From positions 204,345 to 268,344 of IMG/VR virus record IMGVR_UViG_3300049217_000071: a DNA stretch of 64,000 bases; one strand, given 5' to 3'. Below are positions 14,577-53,939 of this stretch, in pieces. A program made the position numbers and the translations under genes. Each line of letters starts with the position of its first letter. The stretch's first letter is position 1. The notes under the pieces are model-generated. The model did no database searches and was not told the DNA's origin. It was given only the letters and a program-made list of their open reading frames with translations.

Positions 14577-15038
14577 ATGCCGAAAATTAGTATCGATTAC
14601 TCAAGTTTAGCCACACAGATCACTAAAAAAGCGTATCGACTTGCTGATGTCAAAGATCAGTTGGAGACGGTAGCATTCGACATTGTGAGATTCAAGGACG
14701 GCGATAAAGGCGCGGACTTATGGCAAGTTCAGAACGCCTCCGATGGTGATTACATCGTAGCGCTGTATGATGACGAAGAGGCCGAGAAGACCGCCGCCTC
14801 CGTGTGGGGAGTGTTGGTTTCTAAGGGCGGCAATGATTTGCAGATCTCCTACAAGGGCGATCCTTTGGTTCGACTCTCGGCTGCTAAGCTGGGTATCCCA
14901 AGTTCCGAATTACATAAGGCTGAGCAGTATCTACCAGAAAGATTGGCCACCAATCAAAAGTTGGTCAAGGCTCTTCTTAGTGAATTGACGGACGCAGCTA
15001 GACTAGAGGTATCCAAGAGATACCCAGAACTGGTATAA
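14577..15038 (+). CDS. Hypothetical protein (probable virion/head-block protein)
   Basis: RBS gggag before the ATG at 14577; first gene after the AATA-N6-TAT motif at 14529. Confidence 0.75.
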   Translation: MPKISIDYSSLATQITKKAYRLADVKDQLETVAFDIVRFKDGDKGADLWQVQNASDGDYIVALYDDEEAEKTAASVWGVLVSKGGNDLQISYKGDPLVRLSAAKLGIPSSELHKAEQYLPERLATNQKLVKALLSELTDAARLEVSKRYPELV

Positions 15039-15055
15039 CGGAATAGGTGTATAAT

Positions 15056-16663
15056 ATGAGCCTCGACAAATTACATCAGATGGTAGGTTCTCTAACAAAG
15101 GCAATAGAGGACAATCAAAAACTGGCTACTCCTATTTTGGCTGCCAAGCTAAACAGGTATTCGGCTGCTAATCCACATGACCAAACCATCGGAACGATGG
15201 CTAGAGTTATGGGCGATTTGGTGGATCATAACACTCTCTTCATTCGCAAGTCTGAATTGAAGTCTCTCTACAATAAGCTCTATTCTCGTGGCACCAAGTT
15301 TGCCGAGTTGTTTCAAGAAGAGTTAGGAGAAACTCCTAAGGAGCCAGAGCTTACCCTCAATCAACGCGATGAATCCTTTAAGCACAATCCATATCATGTG
15401 GGTGATCAGGTATTGGCTAACGCTCTAGAGAGTGTTTTCGATAAGCATACTCCACTCAAGATGTATTCCCAGCCGTTGGCTGATAAGGCTATCAAGTCAG
15501 TTGCTACTACCTTGAATGCCTGGAACCTACGTCCTTCTAAGCTCTCCGTCAGTGATGGTAGCGATAAGTTCATCGTTATCAAGGCTGACTACGAAACTCC
15601 TAAGGGAGTGACTAGCTTCTACGTTCCCGTGGAAGTAACCAAGACAGACGCTATTGATCCAGAAGTTTTTATGGGCAACACTGGCCCCCAAGATCTCAAC
15701 AACACCACCATCAAAGCTTACTTGCACCAGCAAGCTGGCACTAAGATGAAAGTGGCCGGCACCGATATCCTCAAGGCTCTTACTACCGCTTCTTCCGAGA
15801 AGCGTGAAGTAACGGCTGCGGAACTAGCTGTGACCCGACTCAACGCTACCCGTCAGGGCAGGTCTGAGTTTGCCGGTTCACCAGACGGTTGGCTTGGTCT
15901 CAAGGTGGAAGCTGCTGCTAAGGAAGATGTCAAGCTTCCTAAGTCAGATGAGTTCTTCTCTTTCGAGAAGCAGTTTACCTCTCCTCAGGGCCTAGCCTCT
16001 TGGAGATTTGGTGCTGACAAAGTAGTGGCTGCTCGCGACCATATCGCTCGTGAATTGGTCTCTATCGGTTTCACTCGTCCACAAGTCGTGGTGCGTGATA
16101 ACGATGAGAACACCATTTTCTACAGTGTCTCTTTGGACACCGGCAAAGTTGCCTTTACCGTTCCAGTCAAGATTGCGGATGGTAAGATTACTAAACCAAC
16201 TATCTTACTATGCAACGGTTCTATTGCTCCGTTTGATAGAGAAGGTATCAATCAACTCGTCAGCACTAATAAGGTTGATGCTAAGGCTGCTGCCGTCGCC
16301 TCTACTATGGCCTCTCTCAAGCCAAGCGAAGTCATCACCGACCTACGCAAGGCTGTTTCTGAAGGCAATCTTTCCAAGGCGGAAGACGCCCTCAACGTAT
16401 TGGCCAATTCAGGAGATGCCAAGGCTTATGCCACCGCATTCTCTATCTATATGACTGCCATGGCTGGCAACAAGGTCGAAGAGACTCACTGTGCCAAGAT
16501 GGTCAAGGGTAAAGTTAGCGAATACCCAATCTGTACACACACCGGTTTGCCCATCAACAAGGTATACCAAGACAAGGATGGAAACTGTCGTCCATTGTAT
16601 CGTAGAGGTATGGATGAGACTTACGAGGGAGCTTCTTTTCTCAACGCTAAGATCTTAGGGTGA
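15056..16663 (+). CDS. Hypothetical protein (probable virion protein)
   Basis: Long ORF with an internal repeated F(Y/T)VPV(E/K)(V/I) element and a Cys-containing C-terminus. Confidence 0.8.
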   Translation: MSLDKLHQMVGSLTKAIEDNQKLATPILAAKLNRYSAANPHDQTIGTMARVMGDLVDHNTLFIRKSELKSLYNKLYSRGTKFAELFQEELGETPKEPELTLNQRDESFKHNPYHVGDQVLANALESVFDKHTPLKMYSQPLADKAIKSVATTLNAWNLRPSKLSVSDGSDKFIVIKADYETPKGVTSFYVPVEVTKTDAIDPEVFMGNTGPQDLNNTTIKAYLHQQAGTKMKVAGTDILKALTTASSEKREVTAAELAVTRLNATRQGRSEFAGSPDGWLGLKVEAAAKEDVKLPKSDEFFSFEKQFTSPQGLASWRFGADKVVAARDHIARELVSIGFTRPQVVVRDNDENTIFYSVSLDTGKVAFTVPVKIADGKITKPTILLCNGSIAPFDREGINQLVSTNKVDAKAAAVASTMASLKPSEVITDLRKAVSEGNLSKAEDALNVLANSGDAKAYATAFSIYMTAMAGNKVEETHCAKMVKGKVSEYPICTHTGLPINKVYQDKDGNCRPLYRRGMDETYEGASFLNAKILG

Positions 16664-16666
16664 TCC

Positions 16667-17632
16667 ATGAGGCTATTTAGACTAGCTGCCCTGATGGAAA
16701 ACAAATACCACCTTACTTCCACGGCAGCCGCTTGGAACGAGGAGGCTAAGAGGGCGGTGAAGAATGCCTTCAATTTGTATGTCAATCCAGATAGTCCTTC
16801 TTTGAAGGAACCCATTCTACAGATGTTGGCTGACAGCGGAGAGCCTGTTTCTAAGAGCATTCTCGCCAAAATGAATAGCGTAGTGGCTAATCTAGATCAC
16901 CCAAATCACGAAAAGATTTTAGGTCTGATCAAGGAGGTAGTCGACACCATCACTCCAGAATCCAAAAAGGAAGTGAGAAACTTCATTCATACTCATACTA
17001 AAGGAACTACTGAGGCTCAGCGTAATCATCGTGAGCGCCTCAAGTCTAAGTTTGATACCGTGACCGTTCCTCTCATCTCCGTTCTTTCCAAGATCGTGGG
17101 TAAGGAGAGAGTTCTGCCAATTCAGAGAATGGAATTGAGTAAAGAGAAACTGCTGATGTTCTCTCGCACAGCCGCCGCCCAGAAATATGGCTTCGATAAT
17201 CTAGATGTTTTACAGCGTTTACTGCAATATCCTGACCTAAAAGAAAGACTAACTACTCTTATTAATGCCGTGGATCGAGGCCATATTCCAGTAGATGGAC
17301 CTGAGATTATGAAGGAAACCGGCGAAATCAAAGCTTTATTGGCACAGAAAGCTGCTACTAATGAGCCATTTTTAGAGGCAGGTGAGGATGAAGCTCAAAG
17401 AGCACTACAACAACCAGCTCCGGAGACTATAGTGTCTAAACAAATGCTAGCTCGTAAAGAAGAGATCAAACAAGAGCGTGAAGAAGAAGAGGCAGCCCAA
17501 CAAAGAGATGCCGAAAATGCTGAGAGAGAAAAAGCCTTTCAACAAGAACAGATAGAAAAAGATAGGGAACGTCACATCGGGCACAACACTAGCAGTCTTT
17601 CCCTAGAGAGACTATTGAGGAAATATCAATGA
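16667..17632 (+). CDS. Hypothetical protein
   Basis: 321-aa ORF with a charged coiled-coil-like C-terminus. Confidence 0.75.
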   Translation: MRLFRLAALMENKYHLTSTAAAWNEEAKRAVKNAFNLYVNPDSPSLKEPILQMLADSGEPVSKSILAKMNSVVANLDHPNHEKILGLIKEVVDTITPESKKEVRNFIHTHTKGTTEAQRNHRERLKSKFDTVTVPLISVLSKIVGKERVLPIQRMELSKEKLLMFSRTAAAQKYGFDNLDVLQRLLQYPDLKERLTTLINAVDRGHIPVDGPEIMKETGEIKALLAQKAATNEPFLEAGEDEAQRALQQPAPETIVSKQMLARKEEIKQEREEEEAAQQRDAENAEREKAFQQEQIEKDRERHIGHNTSSLSLERLLRKYQ

Positions 17633-19200: not shown

Positions 19201-21107
19201 TGCCGCACGATCCTTCCTACCCAGTTTCTTCTCCTAAAGTGCAGGAAGCGATCCGTCCATATTCTGATGAAGAACTATCTACCGATAAAGATATGGATGA
19301 AAAAATCGAGAAGCTAATGAAGTTTTTCGATGAGCACGGTATCACTTATGATAAGTTTGTTTCTCCGTCCAGAGATTTTATGGACACCAGTAAGAAAGCC
19401 TATCCTAACTATGAGCATTTTGCGTATGTGCCAGGTCAGCATGACACACAGAAATGGTTGATGGCCGTTAAGGACATGTATTACAAGAAGAAGAGGGGCG
19501 TACCCTTTGAAGAGGCTGTTCGCCAGACAACGGGTGGTTGGAAGAAAATGGAGACTTATGACTTCCTAAATTGGCTCAAGTTTTACGAAGAGGGTGCACA
19601 CATGAAATACAAATTCGCACAGGTATGGTATGAAAATGGACAGCCAGGATACTTTCTGCACATCAAGCAGGACACCCAGCAGGTCGCCACACCAACTGTG
19701 GATGTGGATGCCGCCCGTGAAGAAGTAAGTCACCAAGAAGAGAAAAGGCAGATCATTGAGAAGCAACGAGCCAAGATTATTGGTCGTTTGGATTCCGCTG
19801 AAAAGCTACTTCGCTCTCCTGATGGACAAATTTTTGCCGGTCCCGAATTAGAAGGTTTGATGGAGGCCATTTATGGTCTCAAGAAAAAGGTTCAGTTAGT
19901 CAATAAGCTTAGCGTTTCTACTCGTCTCTATGAAGATATGATTGTTCGTGAGTCCAACGTTTTGAGACGTAAAGGTTTTGTCAAAGCCGCTAGCTTGCTT
20001 TACTCTGTAGCTCAAACCCCCGGTGCGGATGCTGTACTCGGTCCCGATGGACAAGCTACCGGTGGTGCCGTACCTCCTCCAGCTCCTCCGCCCGATCCCT
20101 CTGGTGCAGGCCAATCAGGAACTATGGTAGGCTTACCAGCTACTACCCCAGGTACTAACCCAAATACTCCAGTGGATGGCGCGGCCCAAACAGAAAGCCA
20201 ACCATCTGCCGCAGGTCTTCAGCCGCCAGCCGGCCCTCCTGGGACCGCTCAGTCTAGTCCTGCCATTATGCCTCAAGAAGATCCGCAGCCAGCCGGTATC
20301 AAAGAGTTCATGGAGAATATGAACGATGGCAATAAAACCGATGCAGATGATTTGGAAGTGACTGACAATTTGGAAGTGGATGATCCAGAGCAACAACTCA
20401 TGGTATCAGAAGCTCAAGCTATGCCCACCGCCCCAGGTGGACCACCTCCAGCTACTTTGGAAGATGTTCCTATGACGGACACTCCTCCACCAGCACCACT
20501 CAATCCGGTAGATCCAATTCCTGCTATTCCTGAAGCTAAACCTGTCGCAGCTCCAGTAGCTCCAGCTGGTGAAGAACCTTTGGAAGTAACAGAAGACGAT
20601 ATCCCACAAGACACTCCATCAGGTGGTAGCAGTGGTAGTTTAGAGAGCAAGCTAGACAGCACATTTGAGAGCGTCACGATGGAAGAAATTGTGGCCGAGC
20701 TAAAGGACATTTCCCAATACTACAAGGTTAGAGAAATGCCAAGACGTCTTGCCCGCCTAGACATGATGTTTGATAGCAAGGGTATTTCTGCTTACTTCCC
20801 TTCTTTAGCAGAAGCTCAAAGAAGCGCCCTAGAAGCTAACAACTATATCTCTACCCGTATCGATGATATCTTATCTAAGGTCAGCGGTTCCCTTGCTTCC
20901 AAGGATGTAGGCGCCAAACTCAAGGAAGATCAAGATAAAGAGAAGGCTCGTAAGCAGATGAGAAAAGATCAAGAGAATGCCGAACTAGAAGGTGGCGGGG
21001 CTGCCCCTGCCGCTGGTAAAGAAACTCCACAAGTAGAGATGGGTGAGTTAGCTCCTCCAGCCGGTGCTCCCGCTAAAGCTCCGGTAGCTCCACGACCGTT
21101 AGGCTAA
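19200..21107 (+). CDS. Hypothetical protein with long Pro/acidic disordered regions (probable virion protein)
   Basis: 635 aa; KKAY, KFAQ, SVAQ motifs; LEV(T/D)D repeats. Confidence 0.8.
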   Translation: MPHDPSYPVSSPKVQEAIRPYSDEELSTDKDMDEKIEKLMKFFDEHGITYDKFVSPSRDFMDTSKKAYPNYEHFAYVPGQHDTQKWLMAVKDMYYKKKRGVPFEEAVRQTTGGWKKMETYDFLNWLKFYEEGAHMKYKFAQVWYENGQPGYFLHIKQDTQQVATPTVDVDAAREEVSHQEEKRQIIEKQRAKIIGRLDSAEKLLRSPDGQIFAGPELEGLMEAIYGLKKKVQLVNKLSVSTRLYEDMIVRESNVLRRKGFVKAASLLYSVAQTPGADAVLGPDGQATGGAVPPPAPPPDPSGAGQSGTMVGLPATTPGTNPNTPVDGAAQTESQPSAAGLQPPAGPPGTAQSSPAIMPQEDPQPAGIKEFMENMNDGNKTDADDLEVTDNLEVDDPEQQLMVSEAQAMPTAPGGPPPATLEDVPMTDTPPPAPLNPVDPIPAIPEAKPVAAPVAPAGEEPLEVTEDDIPQDTPSGGSSGSLESKLDSTFESVTMEEIVAELKDISQYYKVREMPRRLARLDMMFDSKGISAYFPSLAEAQRSALEANNYISTRIDDILSKVSGSLASKDVGAKLKEDQDKEKARKQMRKDQENAELEGGGAAPAAGKETPQVEMGELAPPAGAPAKAPVAPRPLG

Positions 21108-21112
21108 AATGA

Positions 21113-21886
21113 ATGAAACTCCGAGAGCTACTAGATATGATGCAAAAAACTGCTGTCGAAATTGGTGCCTCTGCTCCAATGATTTGCGGTGGTACGCCCA
21201 GAGATAAGTTTCTTGGACGTTTGGAAAACATTGCAGATATCGATGTAACGACCGGTGATAAGACGGTAGACTATCTTTCCCAAGAGTTTGCTATCAAGTT
21301 GCGTAAGCAATTCAACATTACCAGAAAAACGATGGAAGACGGTCATAGCACCATTTTTGTGGGTAGCTTGAAGGTGGATTTCTCATCCAATTTCATGGTG
21401 CCCAATATCGACACCATCCTGGGTCAGATGAACATCCCTAACCCTTCCGATATGCAAAGAGAGATGTATAGTCGAGACTTCACTTGCAACGCTCTATTGC
21501 TGTCGCTAGATCTCAAGAAGATTACCGATCCTACGGGGCACGGCTTTCAAGACATTCGAGACCGTAAAATCAAGACTTGCCTATCGCCTGAGATTACTCT
21601 TACCTCTAATAGAAACCGTGTCGTCAGGGCCATCTATTTGGCTTGCAAGTTGGATTTCGATATCGATGAGGCTATTATCGATTACGTGCGAAAGAACCCT
21701 CAGACAGTCAAGATATCCACTACTAAATCAATGTCAGATAAGCTAACAGAAGCTTTTACCAGAGATGCCGATAAAGCTTCTAAACTGATTACTAGAATGG
21801 GTTTATGGAATTACATTCCTATCAATGAAAAGATGTATCCATACTATCAAGCACAACTGAAAGGTAATCTCAATGTCGGTCAATAA
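21113..21886 (+). CDS. tRNA nucleotidyltransferase/poly(A) polymerase-family head domain (atypical)
   Basis: GGTPRD...DIDVTT, SRDFTCNAL, DPTGHGFQDI, RVVRAIYLA. The motif normally reading EDxxR reads SNRNR. Confidence 0.85.
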   Translation: MKLRELLDMMQKTAVEIGASAPMICGGTPRDKFLGRLENIADIDVTTGDKTVDYLSQEFAIKLRKQFNITRKTMEDGHSTIFVGSLKVDFSSNFMVPNIDTILGQMNIPNPSDMQREMYSRDFTCNALLLSLDLKKITDPTGHGFQDIRDRKIKTCLSPEITLTSNRNRVVRAIYLACKLDFDIDEAIIDYVRKNPQTVKISTTKSMSDKLTEAFTRDADKASKLITRMGLWNYIPINEKMYPYYQAQLKGNLNVGQ

Positions 21887-23207
21887 GAAGGCTTATTTTC
21901 AAGGTGGGGGCGGAGTCAACGAACCTACGCCAGGCAAAAAGAAATACAAGTCAGATCCGGCCCTGGTGGTGCAGCCCCGTTTTAAAGAGCCATTTTATCG
22001 CAACTACGATTTGTATACGATTCCAGGAATGGAAGAGGTGGGTCCTGGCACCGGTTGGCATGGCCTGCAAAATTATAAAAGCGTTCAGAACTTCTTGAAA
22101 GATCGAAGAAAGCGCCTGCAACCCCGTTATGTAGCCGATGATTCTTGGCAAATTGATTCAGGGGAAAGAGTCAAGAAGAACCCAGACAAAAAAGCCAGAA
22201 TGACTATTCTAGAAAGAATCATCAAACAAGCGGTAGCCTGTCAAGATTCGGATATTGAGTATTCTGATGGAAGAGACGCTTGGATTTGCGGCAATTGCTT
22301 ACACATGGGACCAAATGCCGGAGGTCCAACTCCATCTGTCAAGGAGCTACACGCTGGTAAAAATCATAACTCGGATAAGATAGATTGGCGAAATGGCCAC
22401 TATGAAAATGACCCTAAGTATCTGGCTCTCAAAGAAGAGAGGCGCCACAGAGATGAAAACGATGGTCCCAATTTCGATTATGGTCATGGGGCTTATGACG
22501 CCATGAACAAAGGCGAAAAGATGAAGACTATCACCGATTTCAAGCGCACTAGCCCAGGTGCCCTAATGGGTGTCAAAGCTGATCATATGATGGCACCTAA
22601 AGAACACGGCACCAGTATTTACAACTGGAAGAATAGTCCTTATCAAGGAACTCCGGGTGCCAAGAACAAGAGAAAGAAAGATACCAACAATATCGATTTC
22701 CCCATTGATGAAGAAGTAAATCATCAAGGTGAAATGGTGTATCCCGGAGAAGAGAACTATCAAGCTCCTAAGCACTTAGTTGGTCCCGCAGGACCTCCTG
22801 GTGATGTCAGCACCTATCCTGGTGATGTAGGGCCAACCGACCAATCTTCCTACATCAACTCCGCTCAGATAGCCGGAGAGCATTCTTATCTTCCCAAGTC
22901 AGATGAAGAGTCTAGATCCGATGAGGCTTTGGATTTCGGAAGAGATTATACAGACGAAACTCTCTTAGGCCGCCCTAATGGTGGGGGTGAGTCTTTGTCT
23001 GATGAGATGCAAGATGACGATAAAGAAATGGATTTGGATGCGCTAGAGGCTAAGTATCTAGGATCCACAGAAATTGGATTATTTGGCTTGCCAGATGGGG
23101 TAGATCCCGAAGGCCATGATGCCGATCAAACCGAACAAATAGAACAGCCTTTTACTGGCACATCTGATATTGGCACTCAAATGTATGAAGACAAATGGAA
23201 CATCTAA
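21873..23207 (+). CDS. Hypothetical acidic protein (probable virion protein)
   Basis: The N-terminal KKAYFQGGGGVNEPTP module is shared with the protease-scaffold. Confidence 0.8.
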   Translation: MSVNKKAYFQGGGGVNEPTPGKKKYKSDPALVVQPRFKEPFYRNYDLYTIPGMEEVGPGTGWHGLQNYKSVQNFLKDRRKRLQPRYVADDSWQIDSGERVKKNPDKKARMTILERIIKQAVACQDSDIEYSDGRDAWICGNCLHMGPNAGGPTPSVKELHAGKNHNSDKIDWRNGHYENDPKYLALKEERRHRDENDGPNFDYGHGAYDAMNKGEKMKTITDFKRTSPGALMGVKADHMMAPKEHGTSIYNWKNSPYQGTPGAKNKRKKDTNNIDFPIDEEVNHQGEMVYPGEENYQAPKHLVGPAGPPGDVSTYPGDVGPTDQSSYINSAQIAGEHSYLPKSDEESRSDEALDFGRDYTDETLLGRPNGGGESLSDEMQDDDKEMDLDALEAKYLGSTEIGLFGLPDGVDPEGHDADQTEQIEQPFTGTSDIGTQMYEDKWNI

Positions 23208-23265: not shown

Positions 23266-24228
23266 ATGACTTTACAATCCCAAGCCCAAGAGCTATTCGT
23301 TATGGATATGAGCCCGCCTAAGGCTTCGCAGTTGCCAGCTATGGATACTCATATGATGGACGAGCAGCAACACGAGCATCACCACGAAATGGAAAGTGGC
23401 CACCACATGATGGGAGGCCCAGCCGCCATTGAAGTGGGTGAACCAGTTGATATCTCTATCGTAGTAGAAGAGTTGCCAGGCGCACCAGCCGGCACCAAAG
23501 ACCCTGAGCCGATGATTGAGGTTCAAGAGGAACCTATTCACGCCACCGAAAAAGAAGATGCCAATGATGCGAAGAAAAGCGACAAGGGCGGCAAAGGCGA
23601 AAAGTGGGATTGGGCTAAGCAAGGTCCACACGGTTTCGTGGCTTGGATCAAGAGTAGAATCGAAGATGTGCCACAGCACTCTGGTTATGATTCTGCCGGT
23701 CTAGAACGTGCTATGGCTTATATGGAAAGAGTGGACAACGAAATCTCCAAGGCTATGAGAATGGACTTGGATGGTGAACTAGACGCTAACAAGATTGAGA
23801 AAGTGCGTTCCGAGTTAGATGAAGGTATCGCTAGACTACAAGCTCGTCTTGATAAAGTCAAGGACGCTAAGAAGTCCTCCAAAAAGCGTAAGAAGTCCGC
23901 TGAATATGAAATGGACAGCGAAGGGTTTGTCAAAGAAGCTCAGAAGATTACTGGTGTGCAAGGCGTTTACGTCACCGTTCCACTTCTCATTTCTAGAGTA
24001 GCTCGTGTATGTGTCAACGGCACCGTATCAGCAGGTCACGACATTGAAGACTTGTATGCACGTCAAGTCAAGATGTATAATCTTGACAAGCGTGAGCAGG
24101 CTGAAGTAATGCAGCTTTTGTTTGATATGGGATACCCACTTCGTCAAGATCGTGGCTTTATGCCAGACGACAACTTGGAAATTTGGGACAGCGACAATAT
24201 GGATTGGGCCGCCAACTATAGAGGTTAA
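23266..24228 (+). CDS. Hypothetical protein (probable virion protein)
   Basis: RBS gagg; His-rich patch; KKSAE and VKEAQ motifs. Confidence 0.8.
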   Translation: MTLQSQAQELFVMDMSPPKASQLPAMDTHMMDEQQHEHHHEMESGHHMMGGPAAIEVGEPVDISIVVEELPGAPAGTKDPEPMIEVQEEPIHATEKEDANDAKKSDKGGKGEKWDWAKQGPHGFVAWIKSRIEDVPQHSGYDSAGLERAMAYMERVDNEISKAMRMDLDGELDANKIEKVRSELDEGIARLQARLDKVKDAKKSSKKRKKSAEYEMDSEGFVKEAQKITGVQGVYVTVPLLISRVARVCVNGTVSAGHDIEDLYARQVKMYNLDKREQAEVMQLLFDMGYPLRQDRGFMPDDNLEIWDSDNMDWAANYRG

Positions 24229-24230: not shown

Positions 24231-24893
24231 ATGGCTAAACAACCAAGACAACAGCCGGTCATTCACCGTCAGTCTGAAGAAGAGGTCAGTGAAGACCATT
24301 GGCTGCGTCAGTTCGAGCAGAAGCTACAAAAGACCAGCGTGCAACCACGTGGTAATGAGTCTTTGTTCGAGCAGATCAATACCATTATGAATGGCAAATC
24401 TAAGTATCCTTCCGTGCAAGCTGCCGTGGATGATATGATGCACCGTAGTGGTTTGTCTGGTTATCTAGACAATGTCAAGACTTCCGAAACAGAAGCTCCT
24501 ACCCAGCCGAAAAAAGTGGCCCAGCAAGTGGATCGAGCTAGACTGCAAGAAGTCAAAACTAATCCGAAGACACCTAAGGTCATCGAAGAGAAGCCAAGCA
24601 TTCTACACACTCTGGAAAACATCATTCGAGACTCCAAGGGTAATCTTTCTGTGCCAACCATCATCAGCCGTCTTCACGCTTTGCATGCCTCTGATGTGAC
24701 GGATGAATCGGCTTGGGACGATGATAAACTCATTCGTTTGGTTAGCTATTTCAACATCAAGGCCAAGAAAGACAACCCAGCTAACTTCGAGAATTTCGAT
24801 AACCTGGGCAAGCGAGATCATTCTACCGCCGACTCCGATATTGATCCATCCAACACAGACGCTTTCAATGTGTTGATGCCTGCCAAACTTTGA
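24231..24893 (+). CDS. Hypothetical protein
   Basis: 220-aa ORF; its 3' end overlaps the convergent HNH gene. Confidence 0.75.
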   Translation: MAKQPRQQPVIHRQSEEEVSEDHWLRQFEQKLQKTSVQPRGNESLFEQINTIMNGKSKYPSVQAAVDDMMHRSGLSGYLDNVKTSETEAPTQPKKVAQQVDRARLQEVKTNPKTPKVIEEKPSILHTLENIIRDSKGNLSVPTIISRLHALHASDVTDESAWDDDKLIRLVSYFNIKAKKDNPANFENFDNLGKRDHSTADSDIDPSNTDAFNVLMPAKL

Positions 24894-45957: not shown

Positions 45958-47060
45958 TGTCCAGCGAGATTAGTCTCTGCACAGATCTACTGCTGATAGA
46001 AAGTCTTTTGGGAGATTCCAAGCTCACCAAGAGGGCAGGGGTGGTGTCTGATCTTTTGGATCGCATGAAGGAATATTTTGGTAAGCGTATCGACAAGAGC
46101 CAACCGACCGAAAGCGTTCTCAATCTCTTAGCTCCCGGCACTTTATGGATGGTTCTTCAAGGCGTTGGCCTAGGCAAATGGGGCCTACTCATTGGTTTAC
46201 TCTTAGAAGTTTTTCACGTCAATGTTGTCGGTTTACTAGAGACACTGTGGACAGAAGTGAAATCATTGTTAGCCACTCACGGTAAAGTTTCTTCAGGACA
46301 AATCGACAGCGTGGTCAATAGCGCCATTGCGGCTAATAACGATCCGGGCAATGAAGATGAGGCCAGAAAGGGTTATCAAGTTTTACAGCGGAATCCTGAT
46401 TTGGCCAAGGTAGAAGAAAACCTTTTTGCTGATGATCACGTTTATTCTTCTGCCGAGCTACTCAAAGAAACTCGTTTCCTTAGTTTGTCCATGATCGCTT
46501 ATGAGGATCAAAAGATGAGGCTTACCAAGCAAGCTGATTTATCTAGCTTCTTAGGTGGCTATAGTAAGGGTAATGCTAAGTACACCAGTATTCTAGGTAG
46601 AATCTTAGGCTTTGTTTTCACAGTAGCTCTAGCCTCTGCCGGTTTGATGGTGGCCGGAGACAAGATCAATAAGTTCCTCGGACGTCCAAATGCTATTGAT
46701 GGCACTTACCAAGCGGGACAACCCGAAAGTGAAGCACCTGCGGCTCCAGTATATCATTCCACTCAGACCAAATTTCCATCCAAAGGTGATTCGCCTTTGC
46801 CTCGCTCGTGGCCTTTGATGAACAACCCCGCTAACATCGAAAGTATGTTGGTACAGTTTGCCAAGGATACCTATTCCGGTTTGGATGGTAAGGAAGGTCT
46901 CATCACGGGCTCTTCGGCATTTCAAGCTATTGCTCAACAGATAGATTGGTTCAATATCCATAACAAAGGTAGTGCGGCTATTTTTCTTCCGCCCAGCTAC
47001 ACTTCTAAAAAGCAATTAGTGGATGCTTTCATTGATGATGTGGCTAAAGCGGCTGGATAA
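45957..47060 (+). CDS. Hypothetical protein with hydrophobic segments
   Basis: LWMVLQGVGLGKWGLLIGLLLEVF and ILGFVFTVALASAGLMVAG; TKRAG and TKQAD motifs. Confidence 0.78.
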   Translation: MSSEISLCTDLLLIESLLGDSKLTKRAGVVSDLLDRMKEYFGKRIDKSQPTESVLNLLAPGTLWMVLQGVGLGKWGLLIGLLLEVFHVNVVGLLETLWTEVKSLLATHGKVSSGQIDSVVNSAIAANNDPGNEDEARKGYQVLQRNPDLAKVEENLFADDHVYSSAELLKETRFLSLSMIAYEDQKMRLTKQADLSSFLGGYSKGNAKYTSILGRILGFVFTVALASAGLMVAGDKINKFLGRPNAIDGTYQAGQPESEAPAAPVYHSTQTKFPSKGDSPLPRSWPLMNNPANIESMLVQFAKDTYSGLDGKEGLITGSSAFQAIAQQIDWFNIHNKGSAAIFLPPSYTSKKQLVDAFIDDVAKAAG

Positions 47061-47110: not shown

Positions 47111-48334
47111 ATGAGAAAAAGTGAAATCTTCGAGTCGTTCGTCAAAATAGCCCAAGAAAAGGGCCTTACTTCCGCAACCGAAAAGGGTGATGGTGAGCAC
47201 GAATTTGCCGAACATACGGAAAAGAACTTAGATGATCCAAGATGGGACTCTCTGAGCATTGAGCAAATTGGCAAGCTATACGGCACCAAGCCAAAGGCCC
47301 CCAAGGAGATGGAATATGAGCGCAACATCATCGAGAACGCTCATCCAAAGCCAGTTGTTTTCTTCATGTCCCACGATAAGCTCAATAGTTTGGTAGAAAA
47401 CGAAAACGAAGGCCAAGACGCCCGCATTCACATTTCTCTCAAAGAACCTGATGGTCATTTGACTCAACGCAAATATGCGGAGAAGAAACTAGTTCTTTCT
47501 TTGGTCAGATTAGCTAACGATTTGGACAATCGCAATCAAGATGAACTACGCGCTTTAGCTGATGTCTGTTTAGTTCAGACCGCCACCCCAGGTCTCAAGA
47601 AAACCGCTATTCCACTTTTAGTGTATCCTATTGCCGCCACTATAGGTGCCATTTACGCTAAGAATCACCTAGATTTCCATAGTGATGGCTTTACGGCTGA
47701 CTATGAAAAGACAGTAGGCGAAATAGATGACCTGCTCAATTCTAACAGCAGCTTGCAAACTACAGTAGGGGCCGGATACACTTATACCCCGCAATTCTTA
47801 CAAACCGTCAATCAACTCAAGACTGATTTGGCCGAGTTGAATACAGAGAGGCAGAAGGCTTTGACTATCATAGCAAATCTAAAAACCCCTAGAAACGCCG
47901 ATGAACTCAAGGTGTTAGCTCAGCAACCAGAAACTCATGAGGCGGTGCAAGCTCTCAACGATCTCAATACGGTAATGAATAAAATTGCTACTTTCATTTT
48001 GAAGATAGGCCGTGATTTTAGTAGCGCCTCCTATAAGCAGCAAGCTATTGAACACAAAGGCTTTTTATCCTCTTTGGTAGATTACACAGGAGTTCTCCAT
48101 GGTGGGGCTGGTTTAGTGGCCGATGACTTCGATGATGTGCGTAATGCCCTCAAGACTTTGATGAACGATGTTGTTGAAATTGTTGGAGAATTGAAGAATT
48201 CCGAAACTCTTCGAAAAACTGTTATACGAGAGTTATCTGCTGCCCAAGGTGCCGTTTCTAGAATGACAGAACAGGCTCCCGCCGCTAAACCGGCTGAAAA
48301 TCCAGTAGCAGAACTTGATGAAGAAGTAGGATAA
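47111..48334 (+). CDS. Hypothetical protein (probable internal virion protein)
   Basis: aggtgg RBS; VKIAQ, RKYAE and KKTAI followed by hydrophobic PLLVYPIAATIGAIYA; helical hairpin RLANDLD. Confidence 0.8.
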   Translation: MRKSEIFESFVKIAQEKGLTSATEKGDGEHEFAEHTEKNLDDPRWDSLSIEQIGKLYGTKPKAPKEMEYERNIIENAHPKPVVFFMSHDKLNSLVENENEGQDARIHISLKEPDGHLTQRKYAEKKLVLSLVRLANDLDNRNQDELRALADVCLVQTATPGLKKTAIPLLVYPIAATIGAIYAKNHLDFHSDGFTADYEKTVGEIDDLLNSNSSLQTTVGAGYTYTPQFLQTVNQLKTDLAELNTERQKALTIIANLKTPRNADELKVLAQQPETHEAVQALNDLNTVMNKIATFILKIGRDFSSASYKQQAIEHKGFLSSLVDYTGVLHGGAGLVADDFDDVRNALKTLMNDVVEIVGELKNSETLRKTVIRELSAAQGAVSRMTEQAPAAKPAENPVAELDEEVG

Positions 48335-49465: not shown

Positions 49466-50479
49466 ATGAATATGTTTTCTAGCCAAGGTCAAGTAAACGC
49501 CTCTAATCTAAAGGACGCATTACAGGCCCTAGTAAAGTACGCAGCCATTCTCGAAGAGAATGTTCCTGCTAACCAAGGTCTCGCAGGCCAACCAGCCTTG
49601 AGCGATGACAAGCGTGACGAACTAATTTCTCGCGCTATCTTGACCCAAGACGGTAAGATTGCTCTAGCTCAGGCTATGGCAAACCCAATCCGTAGAAACT
49701 TGGATTACCACGGTATTGCACGTCGTGCTCTAGTCGTTGACCCATTGCCACAAGGTGCAATGCCAACCTACGATAGAGATATCGATGTTGCCGCTGTCGT
49801 TATTTCCAGCAACGGTACTGGCCCAGAGTCCAGAGTTTTCGGTGACAGAGTAGTTGTCCCTGAATTCGAAATCTACGCAAACCCAACTGTGCGTATTGCA
49901 GAAGTAAAGCGTCGTAGATTTAACGTAATTGACAGAGCTGTTCAGAAGGCACGTCAAGAAATCATGGCTCAAGAAGATGCAAACATCTTCGCAGCTCTTG
50001 ATGCAGCTTCTTCTGTTGAAAACACTCTAACTGACATCGCTGATGCAGGTTTGCTCAAGAGAGATCTTGTCGAAATCAAGCAACAGATTGATCGTTGGGA
50101 CTTAGTTACCACCAAGTACTTCATGAACATCAATGAGTTCACTGATATTTTGAAGTGGGGTTCAGGTGGTGGACAAGGCGTAGGCGGCGGAGATTTCGAT
50201 CCTGTCACCATGCGTGAAGTTCTACAAACTGGTCTATATGCTCACATCTGGGGTACAGACATCATGGTCAGCAAGATCGTTCCACCAGGAACCATCTACG
50301 GCGTTGCAGACCCTGAGTTTGTCGGCGTCATGCCTATCCGTCAAGACATTGAAGTCTTGCCGGCCGATGAGCCAAAGCAACTAAAGTTGGGCTGGGTAGT
50401 TTCCGAGATTATCGGTATTGCTATCGTAAACCCAAGAGGTTGTTCCGCAGGTCGTAAGTCAGTCGTAATCGGTGCGTAA
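49466..50479 (+). CDS. Major capsid protein (HK97-like fold inferred)
   Basis: ggag RBS before the ATG at 49466; 337 aa; ALAQAMANPIRRNLDY, VPEFEIYANP, GLYAHIWGTDIMVS, GWVVSEIIGIAIVNP; terminators on both sides. Confidence 0.88.
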   Translation: MNMFSSQGQVNASNLKDALQALVKYAAILEENVPANQGLAGQPALSDDKRDELISRAILTQDGKIALAQAMANPIRRNLDYHGIARRALVVDPLPQGAMPTYDRDIDVAAVVISSNGTGPESRVFGDRVVVPEFEIYANPTVRIAEVKRRRFNVIDRAVQKARQEIMAQEDANIFAALDAASSVENTLTDIADAGLLKRDLVEIKQQIDRWDLVTTKYFMNINEFTDILKWGSGGGQGVGGGDFDPVTMREVLQTGLYAHIWGTDIMVSKIVPPGTIYGVADPEFVGVMPIRQDIEVLPADEPKQLKLGWVVSEIIGIAIVNPRGCSAGRKSVVIGA

Positions 50480-50511: not shown

Positions 50512-50540
50512 AAGGTCCATAGGAAACTATGGACCTTTTC
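50512..50540. terminator. Intrinsic terminator after the MCP (shared with the convergent HNH gene)
   Basis: aaggtccatag-gaaa-ctatggacctt, perfect 11-bp stem. Confidence 0.85.
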
Positions 50541-51117: not shown

Positions 51118-51123
51118 ATCCAA

Positions 51124-52960: not shown

Positions 52961-52967
52961 AGCGGGC

Positions 52968-52995
52968 ATCGTAAAATTTACAAATTACGTGTCAA
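52968..52995 (-). promoter_or_regulatory. Sigma70-like promoter, probably leaderless
   Basis: TTGACA (52995-52990), 16 nt, TACGAT (52973-52968), then 7 nt to the ATG at 52960. Confidence 0.45.
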
Positions 52996-53072
52996 GGTCG
53001 CCCTCTCAAAAAACCGTCCAAAAGTGTAATAAAAAGGCATCATATTAGAGTTCTGTCTAAAGATAGAGGAAT

Positions 53073-53939
53073 ATGCGACTTTTATTCGAGGTTTCTGAAA
53101 TATACAATCTGATTTCTAGAGGCGCCCAAAATGTGCTTGCTAGAAAGCAGTCTATGTTGCTGAGAAAAATAGCTTTGGAGTCTGTATCTTCTGGTAAAGG
53201 TTTTACTAAACAGGCTTTTGATACTCGTCGAATTAACCAAGAAACGGACTACATTCCACGTAGGGGGCTACAAAGCTATCATAAAAGTGAGAAGTTTATT
53301 TCTGATGCCATGGCTGTGAAGGTACAAGCTTTTGCTAAACTGGCCAAGATATTAGATCAACTTAAACTAGAGTATGGTAGGGAGCCGGAATGGCAAGAAA
53401 GTTATACTAGAGTACTCAATGCTGCCATCAATAAAAGTCTCCGCACGGAACAGACGGACGAGGATTTTAGTGATTCGCAACCATCCATGGCTAGTCTGAG
53501 TTATTTAGAAGAACTGATGTATGTTAGATATAGGCTAACACCAGAAGGTATTATGAGTATGTCGGAAGAAAATCTGCGCACCGCTATTCTCAATAAAGAT
53601 GAGCTTTTGGTGCGTCAAGGTATTTCTAACCCAACACGTCCTATCGAAATAACTCCGGGGGATGTTTCCAAATACAGTTATGATCAAATGATGGAAAAAA
53701 TGCTATCTACCATGGCTCAAGTGATGAGCGCCTATAAGCCTCCGCAGCCTGATGATAACTTGACTAGTAAGTTATTTGATGTCAAAGCCACTAAAGAATC
53801 ACCAGAAATAGAGAGAACCGTTACTATCACCATCAAGGACAAGATTGCTGATAAACTTGAAAAGAGGAGTCAGGAATCCTTGGAGGACAAAATTACCATT
53901 GATTCACTTGATGAATTGGTTGTGGAGAACTCAAAATGA
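53073..53939 (+). CDS. Hypothetical protein (probable virion protein)
   Basis: gagga RBS; motif at 53028 upstream; RKIAL and TKQAF. Confidence 0.78.
   Translation: MRLLFEVSEIYNLISRGAQNVLARKQSMLLRKIALESVSSGKGFTKQAFDTRRINQETDYIPRRGLQSYHKSEKFISDAMAVKVQAFAKLAKILDQLKLEYGREPEWQESYTRVLNAAINKSLRTEQTDEDFSDSQPSMASLSYLEELMYVRYRLTPEGIMSMSEENLRTAILNKDELLVRQGISNPTRPIEITPGDVSKYSYDQMMEKMLSTMAQVMSAYKPPQPDDNLTSKLFDVKATKESPEIERTVTITIKDKIADKLEKRSQESLEDKITIDSLDELVVENSK

What the first reader, a model, noticed from the sequence alone, without database searches (positions are those of the whole stretch)
14577..53939. Recurrent K-x-A(Q/Y/S/G/A) motif across head-block proteins: candidate proteome-wide maturation code
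The motif sits near N-termini or at borders between folded and disordered segments. Examples: ITKKAY (14577), SKKAY and YKFAQ (19200), NKKAY (21873), VKEAQ (23266), KKVAQ (24231), SKYAQ (portal, just before the conserved core), MQKTAQ and IKRAG (29556), MIKKAY (33872), RKFAQ, IKKAQ and VKVAS (protease-scaffold), YKYAQ (38525), RKQAS (40217), TKRAG and TKQAD (45957), VKIAQ, RKYAE and KKTAI (47111), VKYAA (MCP N-terminus), TKQAF (53073). Large myoviruses are known to process many head proteins at one short motif (T4 gp21 after I/L-x-E; phiKZ gp175 after S/A/G-x-E). A K-x-A specificity would be a different code, and would flag about 20 unknown genes as head cargo. Caveat: K-x-A is common by chance, so the positional bias needs statistical testing.
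Basis: partly seen in the sequence, partly recalled or inferred. Interest (0 to 1): 0.75.

Follow-up and report, generated by a model that had tools for sequence, protein, structure and literature searches.

The report
Lys-x-Ala head-protein cleavage code
The head genes of this uncultivated giant phage, a relative of Bacillus phage G, share a short conserved motif (hydrophobic-x-Lys-x-Ala) that is most likely the cutting signal of the phage's own capsid-maturation protease, and it differs from the "cut after glutamate" codes known from T4 and phiKZ.

Summary
All listed peptides are at the stated coordinates.

**Frequency.** Bare K-x-A is only weakly enriched (105 against 86 in shuffles). The refined motif [LIFMV]-x-K-x-A occurs 53 times in the head block against 21±4.5 (z≈7). 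It is at chance in the other 357 ORFs of the 268-kb genome. Register-shifted and K→R/E controls are flat.

**Position.** 21 of 52 copies lie in the first 50 residues (p=2e-6).

**Conservation.** In alignments with related metagenomic phages, K-x-A is the best jointly conserved residue pair of 642 types in variable contexts. Lys and a small residue (A/G/S) stay fixed while the next residue varies.

**Location.** Sites fall where prohead proteases are known to cut:
- the MCP N-terminus
- upstream of the portal core
- both ends of the protease domain
- about 40 residues from the scaffold C-terminus
- a disordered linker in one unknown protein

**Protease.** It is fused to a scaffold and has the T4 gp21/herpesvirus assemblin fold.

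**Replication.** The pre-specified motif is also enriched in the phage G head block (26 against 8.6), in proteins mostly not homologous to these.

**Status.** Cleavage itself, and the exact bond, are inferred. No mass spectrometry exists. I found no description of such a code.

The parts
34805..38494 (+). Protease-scaffold fusion protein, 1229 aa. The assemblin-fold protease core is aa ~45-246 and the scaffold-like remainder is aa ~267-1229.
   Evidence: PHROG 18299 'head maturation protease', E 1.8e-11. AF2 core pLDDT >90. T4 gp21 Z 10.5 and herpesvirus proteases Z 8-10.4. Invariant H132, S183, E227. 1363 family representatives, mostly 1100-1300-aa fusions.
34811..34828 (+). Site I-I-K5-L-G7|E at the extreme N-terminus of the protease.
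   Evidence: K 0.99 and small residue 0.99 across 117 family representatives, with flank identity 0.16. Lies in the low-pLDDT N-terminal extension.
34898..34936 (+). Sites F-R-K34-F-A36|Q and L-K-K41-I-A43-P44, just before the folded protease core.
   Evidence: K/A 1.0 in close orthologues, P1' varies A/T/S/N/Q at the first site. The same pair occurs in phage G gp19 (VKTAA, VKIAP). P44 is invariant, so the second site may be uncleavable.
35588..35605 (+). Site L-A-K264-L-A266|D directly after the protease domain. Candidate release site.
   Evidence: K 0.97 and A/S 0.97, conservation 0.81 upstream and 0.29 downstream. Lies at the end of helix 247-266. Not recovered in the wide family alignment.
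36779..36796 (+). Scaffold site L-I-K661-K-A663|Q.
   Evidence: K 0.85 and A/G 0.92, flank identity 0.29, in 117 representatives.
36569..37993 (+). Further conserved scaffold sites: K591 (FVKAA), K854 (FVKYA), K864 (IVKRA), K1060 (VRKEA).
38354..38371 (+). Site L-H-K1186-E-A1188|G, 41 aa from the C-terminus. Candidate maturation site that frees the scaffold from the shell.
   Evidence: K 0.81-0.90 and A 0.86-0.90. 85 of 117 family members have the motif in their last 70 aa, with a mode 36-42 aa from the C-terminus.
49466..50479 (+). Major capsid protein, 337 aa, HK97 fold.
   Evidence: PHROG 2522, E 3.6e-78. 54% identical to phage G gp27.
49529..49546 (+). MCP site L-V-K24-Y-A26|A27. Predicted 26-aa propeptide.
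   Evidence: K 0.98, A 1.0, P1' A/S. The first ~42 aa are absent from the phage G and Tunturi_5 MCPs.
27567..29480 (+). Portal protein, 637 aa.
   Evidence: PHROG 16240, E 3.4e-49.
27828..27845 (+). Portal site I-S-K90-Y-A92|Q, 22 aa upstream of the conserved core.
   Evidence: K 73/73, A/G/S 73/73, Q 73/73. Conservation 0.35 upstream with indels and 0.82 downstream. Phage G portal has RKMAS 15 aa before its core.
29556..30794 (+). Unknown head-block protein (412 aa) with sites M1-Q-K3-T-A5|Q, L-V-K74-S-A76 and F-I-K157-R-A159|G.
   Evidence: K 0.95-0.98 and small residue 1.0 at sites 3 and 157. AF2 places site 157 in the middle of a disordered linker (aa 148-169) between two helical domains, and site 74 inside a confident helix.
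33872..33889 (+). M1-I-K3-K-A5|Y at the N-terminus of the 216-aa protein.
   Evidence: K 0.97, A/S/G 1.0, Y 40/40.
21879..21896 (+). V-N-K5-K-A7|Y-F-Q-G at the N-terminus of the 444-aa protein.
   Evidence: K 0.96, A/G/S 1.0, Y 26/26. The N-terminus is homologous to the scaffold internal repeats.
23926..23943 (+). F-V-K223-E-A225|Q in the 320-aa protein.
   Evidence: K 1.0, A/G 1.0, Q 46/46. Conservation 0.51 upstream and 0.80 downstream.
24324..24524 (+). Sites L-Q-K34-T-S36 and P-K-K95-V-A97|Q in the 220-aa protein.
   Evidence: Site 95: K 0.88, small residue 1.0, P1' S/Q/A/E, flank identity 0.17. Site 34.
19386..19994 (+). Sites K65 (TSKKAY), K138 (KYKFAQ) and K262 (FVKAAS) in the 635-aa protein.
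   Evidence: K 0.71, 1.0 and 1.0; A 0.97, 1.0 and 0.97.
32818..32835 (+). M-I-K154-S-A156|A in the 247-aa protein.
   Evidence: K 1.0 and A 1.0.
38612..38629 (+). Q-Y-K32-Y-A34|Q in the 260-aa protein.
   Evidence: K 1.0, A 1.0, P1' S/Q/E/G.
42744..42800 (+). M-E-K68-Y-A70 and N-Y-K81-S-A83|Q in the 387-aa protein.
   Evidence: from only 8 orthologues.
46023..46040 (+). L-T-K25-R-A27|G in the 367-aa protein.
   Evidence: K 0.98, A/G 0.98, flank identity 0.38.
47138..47611 (+). Sites K12 (FVKIAQ), K121 (QRKYAE) and K164 (LKKTAI) in the 407-aa protein.
   Evidence: K 0.96 at all three. Small residue 0.94-1.0. P1' is variable, e.g. V/G/W/A at site 164.
53202..53219 (+). F-T-K46-Q-A48|F in the 288-aa protein.
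   Evidence: K 1.0, A 1.0. Conservation 0.48 upstream and 0.72 downstream.
14619..14636 (+). I-T-K17-K-A19|Y in the 153-aa protein. Leftmost example.
   Evidence: Present. No orthologues lay within the fetched flanks, so conservation is untested.

Best explanation
The head-morphogenesis block of this phage-G-like giant phage carries a shared recognition motif, [L/F/I/M/V]-x-K-x-[A>G,S].

I propose that the phage's own prohead protease cuts it immediately after the small residue. That gives P5 hydrophobic, P3 Lys, P1 Ala/Gly/Ser and a tolerant P1' (Q and Y favoured here, S in phage G). The protease is the N-terminal assemblin-fold domain of the 1229-aa protease-scaffold fusion at 34805-38494.

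Proposed sequence of events inside the assembled procapsid:
1. The protease trims its own N-terminal extension (sites at K5 and K34).
2. It releases itself from the scaffold (K264-L-A266).
3. It detaches the scaffold's C-terminal ~41-residue tail (K1186-E-A1188) and cuts the scaffold at several internal sites.
4. It removes a 26-residue propeptide from the MCP (after A26) and ~92 residues from the portal.
5. It trims or splits about 15 further proteins of unknown function, which are therefore probably head-internal proteins.

Shown here: the motif, its enrichment, its position, its conservation, the fold of the protease and the replication in phage G.
Inferred: that cleavage happens, that this protease does it, and which bond is cut.
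For: **1. Frequency.** [LIFMV].K.A occurs 53 times against 21.2±4.5 in shuffles in the head block (z 7.1). In the rest of the genome it is 107 against 97.7. All register and charge controls are flat: phi..K.A, phi.K..A, phi.KA, phi.R.A, phi.E.A. The density map confines the excess to window ~15.6-55.6 kb.

**2. Position.** 21 of 52 motifs lie in the first 50 aa, p 2e-6.

**3. Conservation without prior choice.** Among 642 residue-pair types at spacing 1-3 in variable contexts, K.A ranks first in joint conservation. F.K (P5-P3) and K..Y are also near the top. At individual sites K and A/G/S are ~1.0 while the next residue varies.

**4. Placement at canonical substrates.** Sites occur at the MCP N-terminal extension that phage G lacks, upstream of the portal core, at both ends of the protease core, at a modal distance of 36-42 aa from the fusion's C-terminus in 85 of 117 family members, and in the disordered linker of the 29556 protein. 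The terminase and the tail-fibre-like ORFs have none.

**5. Independence.** BLAST finds almost no paralogy among the motif-bearing proteins. The four KKAY copies use different Ala codons.

**6. Replication.** In phage G the pre-specified motif is 26 against 8.6 (Poisson p 1.3e-6) in the first 20 kb (terminase to scaffold), and 0.4-1.6 times expectation over the next 380 kb. Only portal, protease and MCP are homologous between the two head blocks. In Tunturi_5, K.A is enriched in the head region: 58 against 34.7 and 36 against 18.1.

**7. Enzyme.** It has the assemblin/T4 gp21 fold and invariant His132 and Ser183. Known members of this fold read P3 and P1: T4 L/I-x-E and SPN3US A-x-E (PMC5694885), and PrV YLQA|T and VQA|S (PMC4498786).

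**8. Other codes.** The T4, phiKZ, SPN3US and herpes motifs are not enriched here.
Against: - There is no proteomic or biochemical evidence for any cut in this phage or, as far as I could read, in phage G. The Gonzalez 2020 paper was not available.
- The P5 refinement was made after looking at the data. Only the phage G test and the conservation ranking are free of that bias.
- In Tunturi_5 the P5-hydrophobic form is not enriched. In Rctr197k and PaBG the picture is unclear.
- Some conserved K.A pairs lie inside confident helices or conserved cores and are unlikely to be cut: K74 of the 29556 protein, K322 of the portal and K65 of the MCP (numbered from 49463).
- The K264 release site is not recovered in the wide family alignment.
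- Structure prediction of the protease with the MCP peptide gave no answer.
- Pfam does not recognise the protease.
Confidence: 0.72

Rival explanations
1. The motif and the protease are the same, but the scissile bond follows the Lys. The hydrophobic residue is then P3, Lys is P1 and the small residue is P2'. This would be a charge-reversed copy of the T4 rule [L/I]-x-E|.
For: The pattern of hydrophobic residue, any residue, then charged residue matches the T4 gp21 P3-P1 pattern (PMC5694885). The enzyme's best structural match is T4 gp21. HK97 gp5 is cut after a Lys (my own knowledge, not checked here). Nothing I computed fixes the bond.
Against: The residue after the Lys is unconstrained and often bulky (I, E, Y, K, L, F). 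That suits a solvent-facing P2 better than a P1'. The strictly small residue suits an S1 pocket such as that of the herpes proteases, which cut after Ala (PMC4498786). The following position shows lineage-specific preferences, Q/Y here and S in phage G (K.AS 12 against 2.4). Such preferences are more plausible for a P1' than for a P3'.
Confidence: 0.14
2. The motif is a docking or capsid-targeting signal. It is bound by the scaffold, the protease or the portal to recruit proteins into the procapsid, and it is not itself cut.
For: The N-terminal bias and the restriction to the head block would also fit a targeting sequence. At three N-terminal sites the residue after the motif is invariant: Y 26/26, Y 40/40, Q 62/64. 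The invariant K-I-A-P44 in the protease looks uncleavable.
Against: Many sites are internal, or lie at the C-terminal end of the protease domain, or lie ~40 aa from the scaffold C-terminus. These are positions typical of release and maturation cuts, not of targeting. In the one well-studied case, T4, targeting sequences end in the cleavage motif, so the two roles are not exclusive (my own knowledge).
Confidence: 0.09
3. The motif is a by-product of composition or secondary structure (Lys/Ala/Leu-rich helices of scaffold-like proteins), or of the reader's selection after seeing the data.
For: Head-block proteins are richer in Ala (8.5% against 6.9%). Bare K.A is only 1.2 times the shuffle expectation. 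An unbiased 3-residue enumeration is topped by low-complexity patterns such as PAP, PPP and KKS.
Against: Shuffles keep each protein's composition. Shifted registers are flat, and an i/i+2/i+4 spacing is not helical. The excess remains without the scaffold fusion, 41 motifs in 11,401 aa. K.A is the top conserved pair of 642. The pre-specified motif replicates in phage G, at 30% GC and in mostly non-homologous proteins.
Confidence: 0.04

Closest known systems
T4 gp21 prohead protease and its [L/I]-x-E code, with the related phiKZ gp175 S/A/G-x-E and SPN3US gp245 A-x-E codes
   Same: One phage-encoded assemblin-fold serine protease processes many head proteins (MCP, portal, scaffold, itself, internal proteins) at one short motif with determinants at alternating positions. 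Short N-terminal propeptides and multiple cuts in the scaffold are shared features. T4 gp21 is the best structural match (Z 10.5).
   Different: All described codes of this group cut after Glu (PMC5694885, PMC10052503). Here the fixed residues are Lys and a small residue, with a hydrophobic residue two positions further upstream. The Glu-type motifs are not enriched. The protease is fused to the scaffold, carries an N-terminal extension and contains a Cys3-His knuckle.
Herpesvirus assemblin-scaffold polyprotein (HSV/PrV UL26, HCMV UL80a) with its R- and M-sites
   Same: The N-terminal protease of the same fold (Z 8-10.4) is fused to a long scaffold. One motif copy lies directly after the protease domain, like the R-site. 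Another lies ~40 aa from the C-terminus, like the M-site, which removes 37 aa in PrV. The proposed cut follows a small residue (Ala), as in PrV YLQA|T and VQA|S (PMC4498786). Phage G favours Ser after the Ala.
   Different: P3 is Lys rather than Val/Leu/Gln. The herpes-type [VLI]-x-A(S) motif is not enriched. Only one His is invariant, so a Ser-His-His triad is unlikely. The substrates include MCP, portal and many cargo proteins. The host is a bacterium.
Bacillus (Lysinibacillus) phage G gp19 protease and head block
   Same: This is the closest cultivated relative: MCP 54%, protease 34-38% and portal 34% identical. The N-terminal K-x-A-A...K-I-A-P pair is the same. K-x-A|S copies occur at the protease C-terminus. 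The head block shows the same enrichment.
   Different: gp19 is a stand-alone 300-aa protease with separate scaffold candidates. The gp27 MCP lacks the N-terminal extension that carries the motif here. P1' prefers Ser. I found no published cleavage motif for phage G.
HK97 gp4 / Pfam S78-type prohead proteases
   Same: Same superfamily role, and the same gene position between portal and MCP.
   Different: There is no Pfam match at E ≤ 0.01, and no defined short consensus is known for HK97 (my own knowledge).

Membership tests
Assemblin-fold prohead serine proteases (T4 gp21 / herpesvirus assemblin superfamily) | The characteristic fold | tested here: met
   AF2 core aa 45-246 has pLDDT >90. The top Foldseek PDB hits are EBV, HSV-2, KSHV, VZV, PRV and HCMV proteases and T4 gp21, probability 0.96-0.99. 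VIA-align gives Z 10.5 for T4 gp21 and 10.4 for VZV.
Assemblin-fold prohead serine proteases (T4 gp21 / herpesvirus assemblin superfamily) | Conserved catalytic His and Ser in that order, plus a third His, Asp or Glu | tested here: inconclusive
   H132, S183, E218 and E227 are invariant in 49 sequences of 40-68% identity. Their order and spacing fit the family (my own knowledge). Residue-level superposition and catalysis were not tested.
Assemblin-fold prohead serine proteases (T4 gp21 / herpesvirus assemblin superfamily) | Match to a curated sequence family of head maturation proteases | tested here: inconclusive
   PHROG 18299 'head maturation protease' matches at E 1.8e-11. No Pfam family matches at E ≤ 0.01.
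Assemblin-fold prohead serine proteases (T4 gp21 / herpesvirus assemblin superfamily) | Proteolytic processing of head proteins | not testable with these tools
   This needs MS or biochemistry.
Glu-P1 cleavage codes (T4 L/I-x-E; phiKZ S/A/G-x-E; SPN3US A-x-E) | Excess of the Glu-ending motif in head proteins | tested here: not met
   [LI].E z 1.9, [SAG].E z -0.3 and A.E z -0.2 in the head block, against z 7.4 for [LIFMV].K.A.
Herpesvirus UL26-type protease-scaffold polyprotein | Protease fused N-terminally to the scaffold | tested here: met
   A single 1229-aa ORF, with the protease at aa 45-246. Most of the 150 best family representatives are 1100-1300-aa fusions.
Herpesvirus UL26-type protease-scaffold polyprotein | Release site after the protease domain and maturation site near the C-terminus, both cut after Ala | tested here: inconclusive
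   Motif copies are at K264-L-A266 (K 0.97 in close orthologues) and K1186-E-A1188. 85 of 117 family members have a copy with a mode 36-42 aa from the C-terminus. Cleavage was not tested, and K264 was not recovered in the wide alignment.
Herpesvirus UL26-type protease-scaffold polyprotein | Nested in-frame gene for a scaffold-only product | tested here: inconclusive
   One in-frame ATG (M405) follows a GAGGA site. Its conservation and use were not tested.
Herpesvirus UL26-type protease-scaffold polyprotein | Ser-His-His catalytic triad | tested here: not met
   H132 is the only invariant His of the core, so the third catalytic residue is more likely acidic, as in phage enzymes.
Phage-G-like giant phages (Donellivirus relatives) | Homologous MCP, portal, protease and terminase in the same order | tested here: met
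   MCP 54%, portal 34% and protease 34% identical to phage G. This is not the same genus-level group: megablast finds nothing, and most head-block proteins are not shared.

The most novel reading that the evidence does not exclude
An assemblin-fold phage protease reads Lys at P3 and cuts after Ala, as herpesvirus assemblins do. It sits in a herpes-like protease-scaffold polyprotein with release-like and maturation-like sites. This 'K-x-A code' is shared by the whole phage-G-like megaphage lineage: more than 1,300 protease clusters at 50% identity and hundreds of metagenomic contigs of up to 480 kb. If so, the mature ends and the packaged cargo of uncultivated megaphage heads could be predicted from sequence alone. 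A P1-small specificity with R/M-site architecture would then not be an invention of herpesviruses.
Probability: 0.5. Interest if true: 0.75.

Novelty: new variant of a known kind. Interest (0 to 1): 0.62.

Why it matters
Proteolytic maturation codes are the main sequence-level handle on what is inside a giant phage head. In T4, phiKZ and SPN3US the Glu-ending motif made it possible to recognise processed head and ejection proteins and to define their mature forms.

- **A handle on megaphage heads.** Phage-G-like megaphages are abundant in metagenomes but almost uncultivated, and their head-block proteins have no recognisable families. A different, well-defined code would mark about 15-20 ORFs per genome as candidate head-internal proteins and predict their mature N-termini.
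- **An explanation for missed sites.** Ordinary tryptic proteomics would miss these sites, because the Lys sits two residues before the cut.
- **A link to herpesviruses.** The code connects phage and herpesvirus assemblins by specificity and polyprotein layout as well as by fold.
- **Directly testable.** It can be checked in phage G, which is in culture.

Tried and rejected
- **Megablast.** A search of the protease gene against GenBank phages found nothing.
- **Pfam.** Ten head-block proteins gave no significant hit. PHROGs left 17 of the 20 further ORFs unexplained.
- **Unbiased enumeration.** A count of all gapped 3-residue patterns was dominated by low-complexity repeats (PAP, PPP, KKS). 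It did not single out K.AQ, although L.K.A and VK.A were near the top.
- **First 'conserved island' scan.** It used exact residues and missed the A/G/S class, so it was uninformative.
- **DNA-level explanation.** Rejected, because the KKAY copies use four different Ala codons and the motif occurs almost only in frame in the head block.
- **Paralogy as the source of repeated N-termini.** Rejected. The only hit is the 21873 protein against the scaffold repeats.
- **Protease-peptide complex prediction.** No answer, so I do not use it as evidence either way.
- **Literature.** The phage G structural and MS paper (PMC7316594) is not held. The phage G multi-omics papers, the PaBG paper and the SPN3US papers give no K-x-A motif. 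A term search for K-X-A or Lys-X-Ala with prohead protease found nothing. Nothing was found on Tunturi phages.
- **PaBG.** The MCP has SVKEA|M at residue 45-47, but the published ~20% mass loss does not match that position. Inconclusive.
- **Rctr197k.** Ambiguous.
- **Tunturi_5.** This phage supports K.A but not the hydrophobic P5.

Full report
**Setting**

The window is the last 64 kb of a 268,344-bp IMG/VR virus record, estimated 62% complete. GC content is 44.7% and nearly all genes are on the + strand.

PHROG profiles identify four landmark genes:
- large terminase, 25607-27484
- portal, 27567-29480
- a 1229-aa protein whose N-terminal part matches 'head maturation protease', 34805-38494
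- major capsid protein, ORF 49373-50479

The true MCP start is ATG 49466, behind an AGGAG site.

The closest phage in GenBank is Bacillus phage G: MCP 54%, portal 34% and protease 34-38% identical. Nothing matches at the DNA level. Relatives are abundant in metagenomes. 334 IMG/VR contigs carry a portal 72-88% identical, some on contigs of 340-480 kb. Most other head-block ORFs match no PHROG or Pfam family.

There are 105 copies in the 37 head-block ORFs against 86±8 in within-protein shuffles (z 2.2-2.4).

| Pattern | Head block | Shuffle expectation | z |
|---|---|---|---|
| K.A | 105 | 86 | 2.2-2.4 |
| K.A[QYSGA] | 41 | 26 | 3.2 |
| K.A[QY] | 19 | 6.5 | 4.9 |
| KKAY | 4 | 0.2 | 8.0 |

K.AS, K.AG and K.AA taken singly are at chance. 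The four in-frame KKAY copies are the only + strand matches to the back-translated pattern in the whole genome. They use four different Ala codons, so the signal is in the protein, not the DNA.

**Refining the motif**

Ortholog alignments (below) showed a hydrophobic residue two positions before the Lys. [LIFMV]-x-K-x-A occurs 53 times in the head block against 21.2±4.5 (z 7.1). In the other 357 ORFs of the genome it is 107 against 97.7 (z 0.9).

The following controls are all flat:
- moving the hydrophobic residue by one position towards or away from the Lys: no comparable excess (z 3.0 and 0.3, against 7.1)
- moving the Ala by one position: no excess
- replacing Lys by Arg or Glu
- reversing the motif: no comparable excess (z 2.3, against 7.1)

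K-x-A without the hydrophobic residue is slightly depleted. An i/i+2/i+4 pattern is what an extended, protease-bound strand presents to one face. It is not helical periodicity.

A 10-kb density map confines the excess (2.7-3.5 times) to window ~25.6-55.6 kb, with a weaker excess (1.7 times) from 15.6 kb. 21 of 52 copies lie within the first 50 residues, where 13.8% of the sequence lies (p 2e-6). The terminase, the putative decoration protein and the tail-fibre-like ORFs downstream carry none or almost none. BLAST finds almost no paralogy among the motif-bearing proteins, so the copies are independent.

**Conservation**

I extracted orthologues of 35 window proteins from the 160 related loci; 30 had at least 8 orthologues and were aligned.

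To avoid choosing the motif beforehand, I ranked all residue pairs at spacing 1-3 by joint conservation relative to their flanks. In variable contexts (flank identity <0.6) K-x-A is first of 642 pair types and also the most numerous. Overall it is fifth of 692. F-x-K and K-x-x-Y, which are parts of the same motif, are also near the top. This is notable because Lys and Ala are normally among the least conserved residues.

At individual sites Lys and a small residue (A, sometimes G or S) are kept in 95-100% of orthologues while the next residue varies. Examples:

| Protein and site | Sequence | Conservation |
|---|---|---|
| Portal, K90 | x-K-x-[A/G/S]-Q | K and Q 73/73; variable, indel-rich segment upstream (0.35), conserved core downstream (0.82) |
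| 24231 protein, K95 | PKKVA | flank identity 0.17; P1' S/Q/A/E |
| 29556 protein, K157 | FIKRA | flank identity 0.32; P1' G/N/S/A |
| 47111 protein, K164 | LKKTA | P1' V/G/W/A |
| MCP, K24 | LVKYA | P1' A/S |

A site-weighted logo gives:
- P5: L/F/M/I/V
- P4: V/I-biased
- P3: K (0.97)
- P2: any residue
- P1: A 0.70, G 0.15, S 0.14
- P1': Q/E/S/A/G/Y

**The enzyme**

The first 300 residues of the 34805 protein find 1363 cluster representatives (E ≤ 0.001) among 1.84 billion proteins. The best 150 are mostly 1100-1300-aa proteins of the same layout, so protease-scaffold fusion is the rule in this family.

An AF2 model built on 49 sequences has a confident core at aa 45-246 (pLDDT >90) and a low-confidence N-terminal extension. 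Foldseek's top PDB hits are herpesvirus proteases and T4 gp21 (probability 0.96-0.99). VIA-align gives Z 10.5 for T4 gp21 and 8-10.4 for the herpes enzymes, above the method's background of 7-8. H132, S183, E218 and E227 are invariant. Pfam does not recognise the domain.

**Where the motif sits in the protease-scaffold fusion**

Across 117 representatives averaging 36% identity:
- [F/L/I/M]-x-K5-x-[G/A] at the extreme N-terminus is kept in 99%, with flank identity 0.16.
- F-x-K34-x-A is kept in ~86%.
- [L/M/I]-x-K661-x-A-Q is kept in 85-92%.
- In close orthologues K264-L-A266 follows the last helix of the protease domain, with conservation falling from 0.81 to 0.29 across it.
- 85 of 117 members have a motif copy in their last 70 residues, with a sharp mode 36-42 residues from the C-terminus. 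Here it is K1186-E-A1188, 41 residues from the end.

This is the layout of herpesvirus UL26. There, an R-site after the protease releases it and an M-site near the C-terminus (37 residues in PrV) frees the scaffold from the capsid protein. Both are cut after Ala: YLQA|T and VQA|S (PMC4498786).

The invariant K41-I-A43-P44, directly before the folded core, has Pro in the P1' position. It may be an uncleavable copy, but that is speculation.

**Structural context in an unknown protein**

An AF2 model of the 29556 protein (49 sequences) shows two helical domains joined by a disordered linker at aa 148-169. The conserved F-I-K157-R-A159|G lies in the middle of that linker. M1-Q-K3-T-A5|Q lies in the low-confidence N-terminus. 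The K74 copy lies inside a confident helix and may not be accessible.

**Independent replication**

I then applied the fixed motif to 400 kb of phage G (30% GC). [LIFMV]-x-K-x-A is 26 against 8.6 expected (Poisson p 1.3e-6) in the first 20 kb, which holds terminase, portal, protease and scaffold candidates. It is 0.4-1.6 times expectation in the nineteen other 20-kb bins. K-x-A-S is 12 against 2.4 there. Only portal, protease and MCP are detectably homologous between the two head blocks, so the excess recurs largely in proteins that are not detectably homologous.

Phage G gp19 has V-K-T-A-A...V-K-I-A-P at its N-terminus, aligned with K34/K41 here. It also has K-V-A-S and K-I-A-S at its C-terminal end. 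The phage G portal has R-K-M-A-S 15 residues before the conserved core.

In the more distant Tunturiibacter phage Tunturi_5 (MCP 33%), K-x-A is enriched in the head region, 58 against 34.7 and 36 against 18.1. The hydrophobic P5 is not enriched there. Rctr197k and PaBG are inconclusive.

**Comparison with known codes**

The described giant-phage and T4 codes all end in Glu: T4 L/I-x-E, phiKZ S/A/G-x-E and SPN3US A-x-E (PMC5694885, PMC10052503). None of these, nor the herpes [V/L/I]-x-A(S), is enriched in this head block.

The PaBG paper reports processing of head proteins but no motif. Searches of the held literature found no K-x-A specificity for a prohead protease. The one paper that might contain phage G cleavage data could not be read.

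**Mechanism proposed**

The assemblin-fold domain recognises hydrophobic(P5)-x-Lys(P3)-x-small(P1) in an extended segment and cuts after the small residue. It trims itself, releases itself from the scaffold, detaches the scaffold tail and cuts the scaffold at several internal sites. It removes 26 residues from the MCP and about 92 from the portal, and it processes about 15 proteins of unknown function. These would then be head-internal or ejection proteins.

The choice of bond rests on three points:
- The residue after the Lys is unconstrained and often bulky.
- The small position is strictly small.
- The following position shows lineage-specific preferences.

The alternative, cutting after Lys in analogy to T4's L/I-x-E, is not excluded. 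A practical consequence is that with Lys two residues before the cut, tryptic digests leave only a dipeptide on the propeptide side. The mature ends also look like ordinary non-tryptic N-termini, so standard virion proteomics would easily miss the code.

**Limits**

- There is no direct evidence of cleavage.
- The hydrophobic P5 was found after looking at the data. The phage G test and the conservation ranking are the unbiased parts.
- Close relatedness of the metagenomic orthologues limits the power at well-conserved proteins such as the MCP (90-97% identical).
- The complex prediction of the protease with the MCP peptide returned no answer.

**Verdict**

This is a real, statistically robust and evolutionarily conserved motif. 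It is best explained as the cleavage code of a phage-G-type prohead protease. That is a new variant of a known kind of system, with an unexpected resemblance to herpesvirus assemblin in specificity and polyprotein layout.

Noticed in passing
L087:15778 onward, and ~20 of the 150 best protease-family representatives (e.g. P0066, P0076, P0083); insertion point corresponds to window ~35113-35120: Many homologues of the protease carry a ~370-aa intein-like insertion (Hint plus homing-endonuclease-like) between KPYKN and NGDIF. The following Ser is changed to Cys. The insertion lies in the invariant N105-x-N107-x-D109 loop. The window's copy has none.
   Followed up: partly
window 35381-35431 (aa 193-209 of the 34805 protein): An invariant C193-x2-C196...C207-x-H209 knuckle is inserted in the protease domain between the putative catalytic Ser183 and E227. 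I do not recall one in T4 gp21 or the herpes enzymes. It may bind zinc.
   Followed up: no
window 36035-36574 and 21879-22133: The scaffold part contains two ~80-aa internal repeats (aa 411-490 and 506-590, 'YFQGGGGVNEPTP...'). They are homologous to the N-terminus of the 21873 protein. The 21873 copy, and the first scaffold repeat in orthologues, begin right after a K-x-small site; repeat 2 here does not.
   Followed up: partly
window 36017-36019 (M405 of the 34805 ORF): An in-frame ATG preceded by GAGGA lies just before the first scaffold repeat. It could give a scaffold-only product, as with herpes UL26.5 or lambda Nu3. Its conservation was not checked.
   Followed up: no
window 39434-39994, 41753-42472 (+); 24818-25579, 50527-51123 (-): GIY-YIG-like homing-endonuclease ORFs on the + strand, and Cys-rich ORFs on the minus strand that may also be homing endonucleases, interrupt the head block. 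A TGATATAT-type motif lies upstream of several of them and of other ORFs (10155, 13380).
   Followed up: no
window 21113-21886 (+) and 51728-52969 (-): Two tRNA nucleotidyltransferase (CCA-adding)-like ORFs lie inside the head block (PHROG 2244 for the first, the GGxVRD signature for the second). Neither has a conserved K-x-A site.
   Followed up: partly
genome 160,676-168,626 (outside the window, upstream): A cluster of small ORFs (88-330 aa) has several hydrophobic-x-K-x-A copies within the first 40 residues. Local motif density is 2.7 times expectation. They are candidates for small internal head proteins encoded away from the head block.
   Followed up: no
window 30797-31945: This protein has an N-terminal lytic-transglycosylase-like domain, matching phage tail-lysin and internal-virion-protein families. 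It has no conserved cleavage motif.
   Followed up: no
window 54658-58982 and 60873-62401: Paralogous tail-fibre-like ORFs (54658/55223/56607 and 60873/61634) lie directly downstream of the head block and are almost free of K-x-A.
   Followed up: no
window 49340-49372: A strong terminator-like hairpin (GAGCCCGCAAGGGCTC followed by a T run) lies ~95 nt upstream of the MCP start, inside the spurious TTG-extended ORF.
   Followed up: no
P0016, P0024: Two fragments of close protease homologues are deposited under Cytophagaceae and Flammeovirgaceae MAG names. This hints at Bacteroidota hosts for this clade.
   Followed up: no
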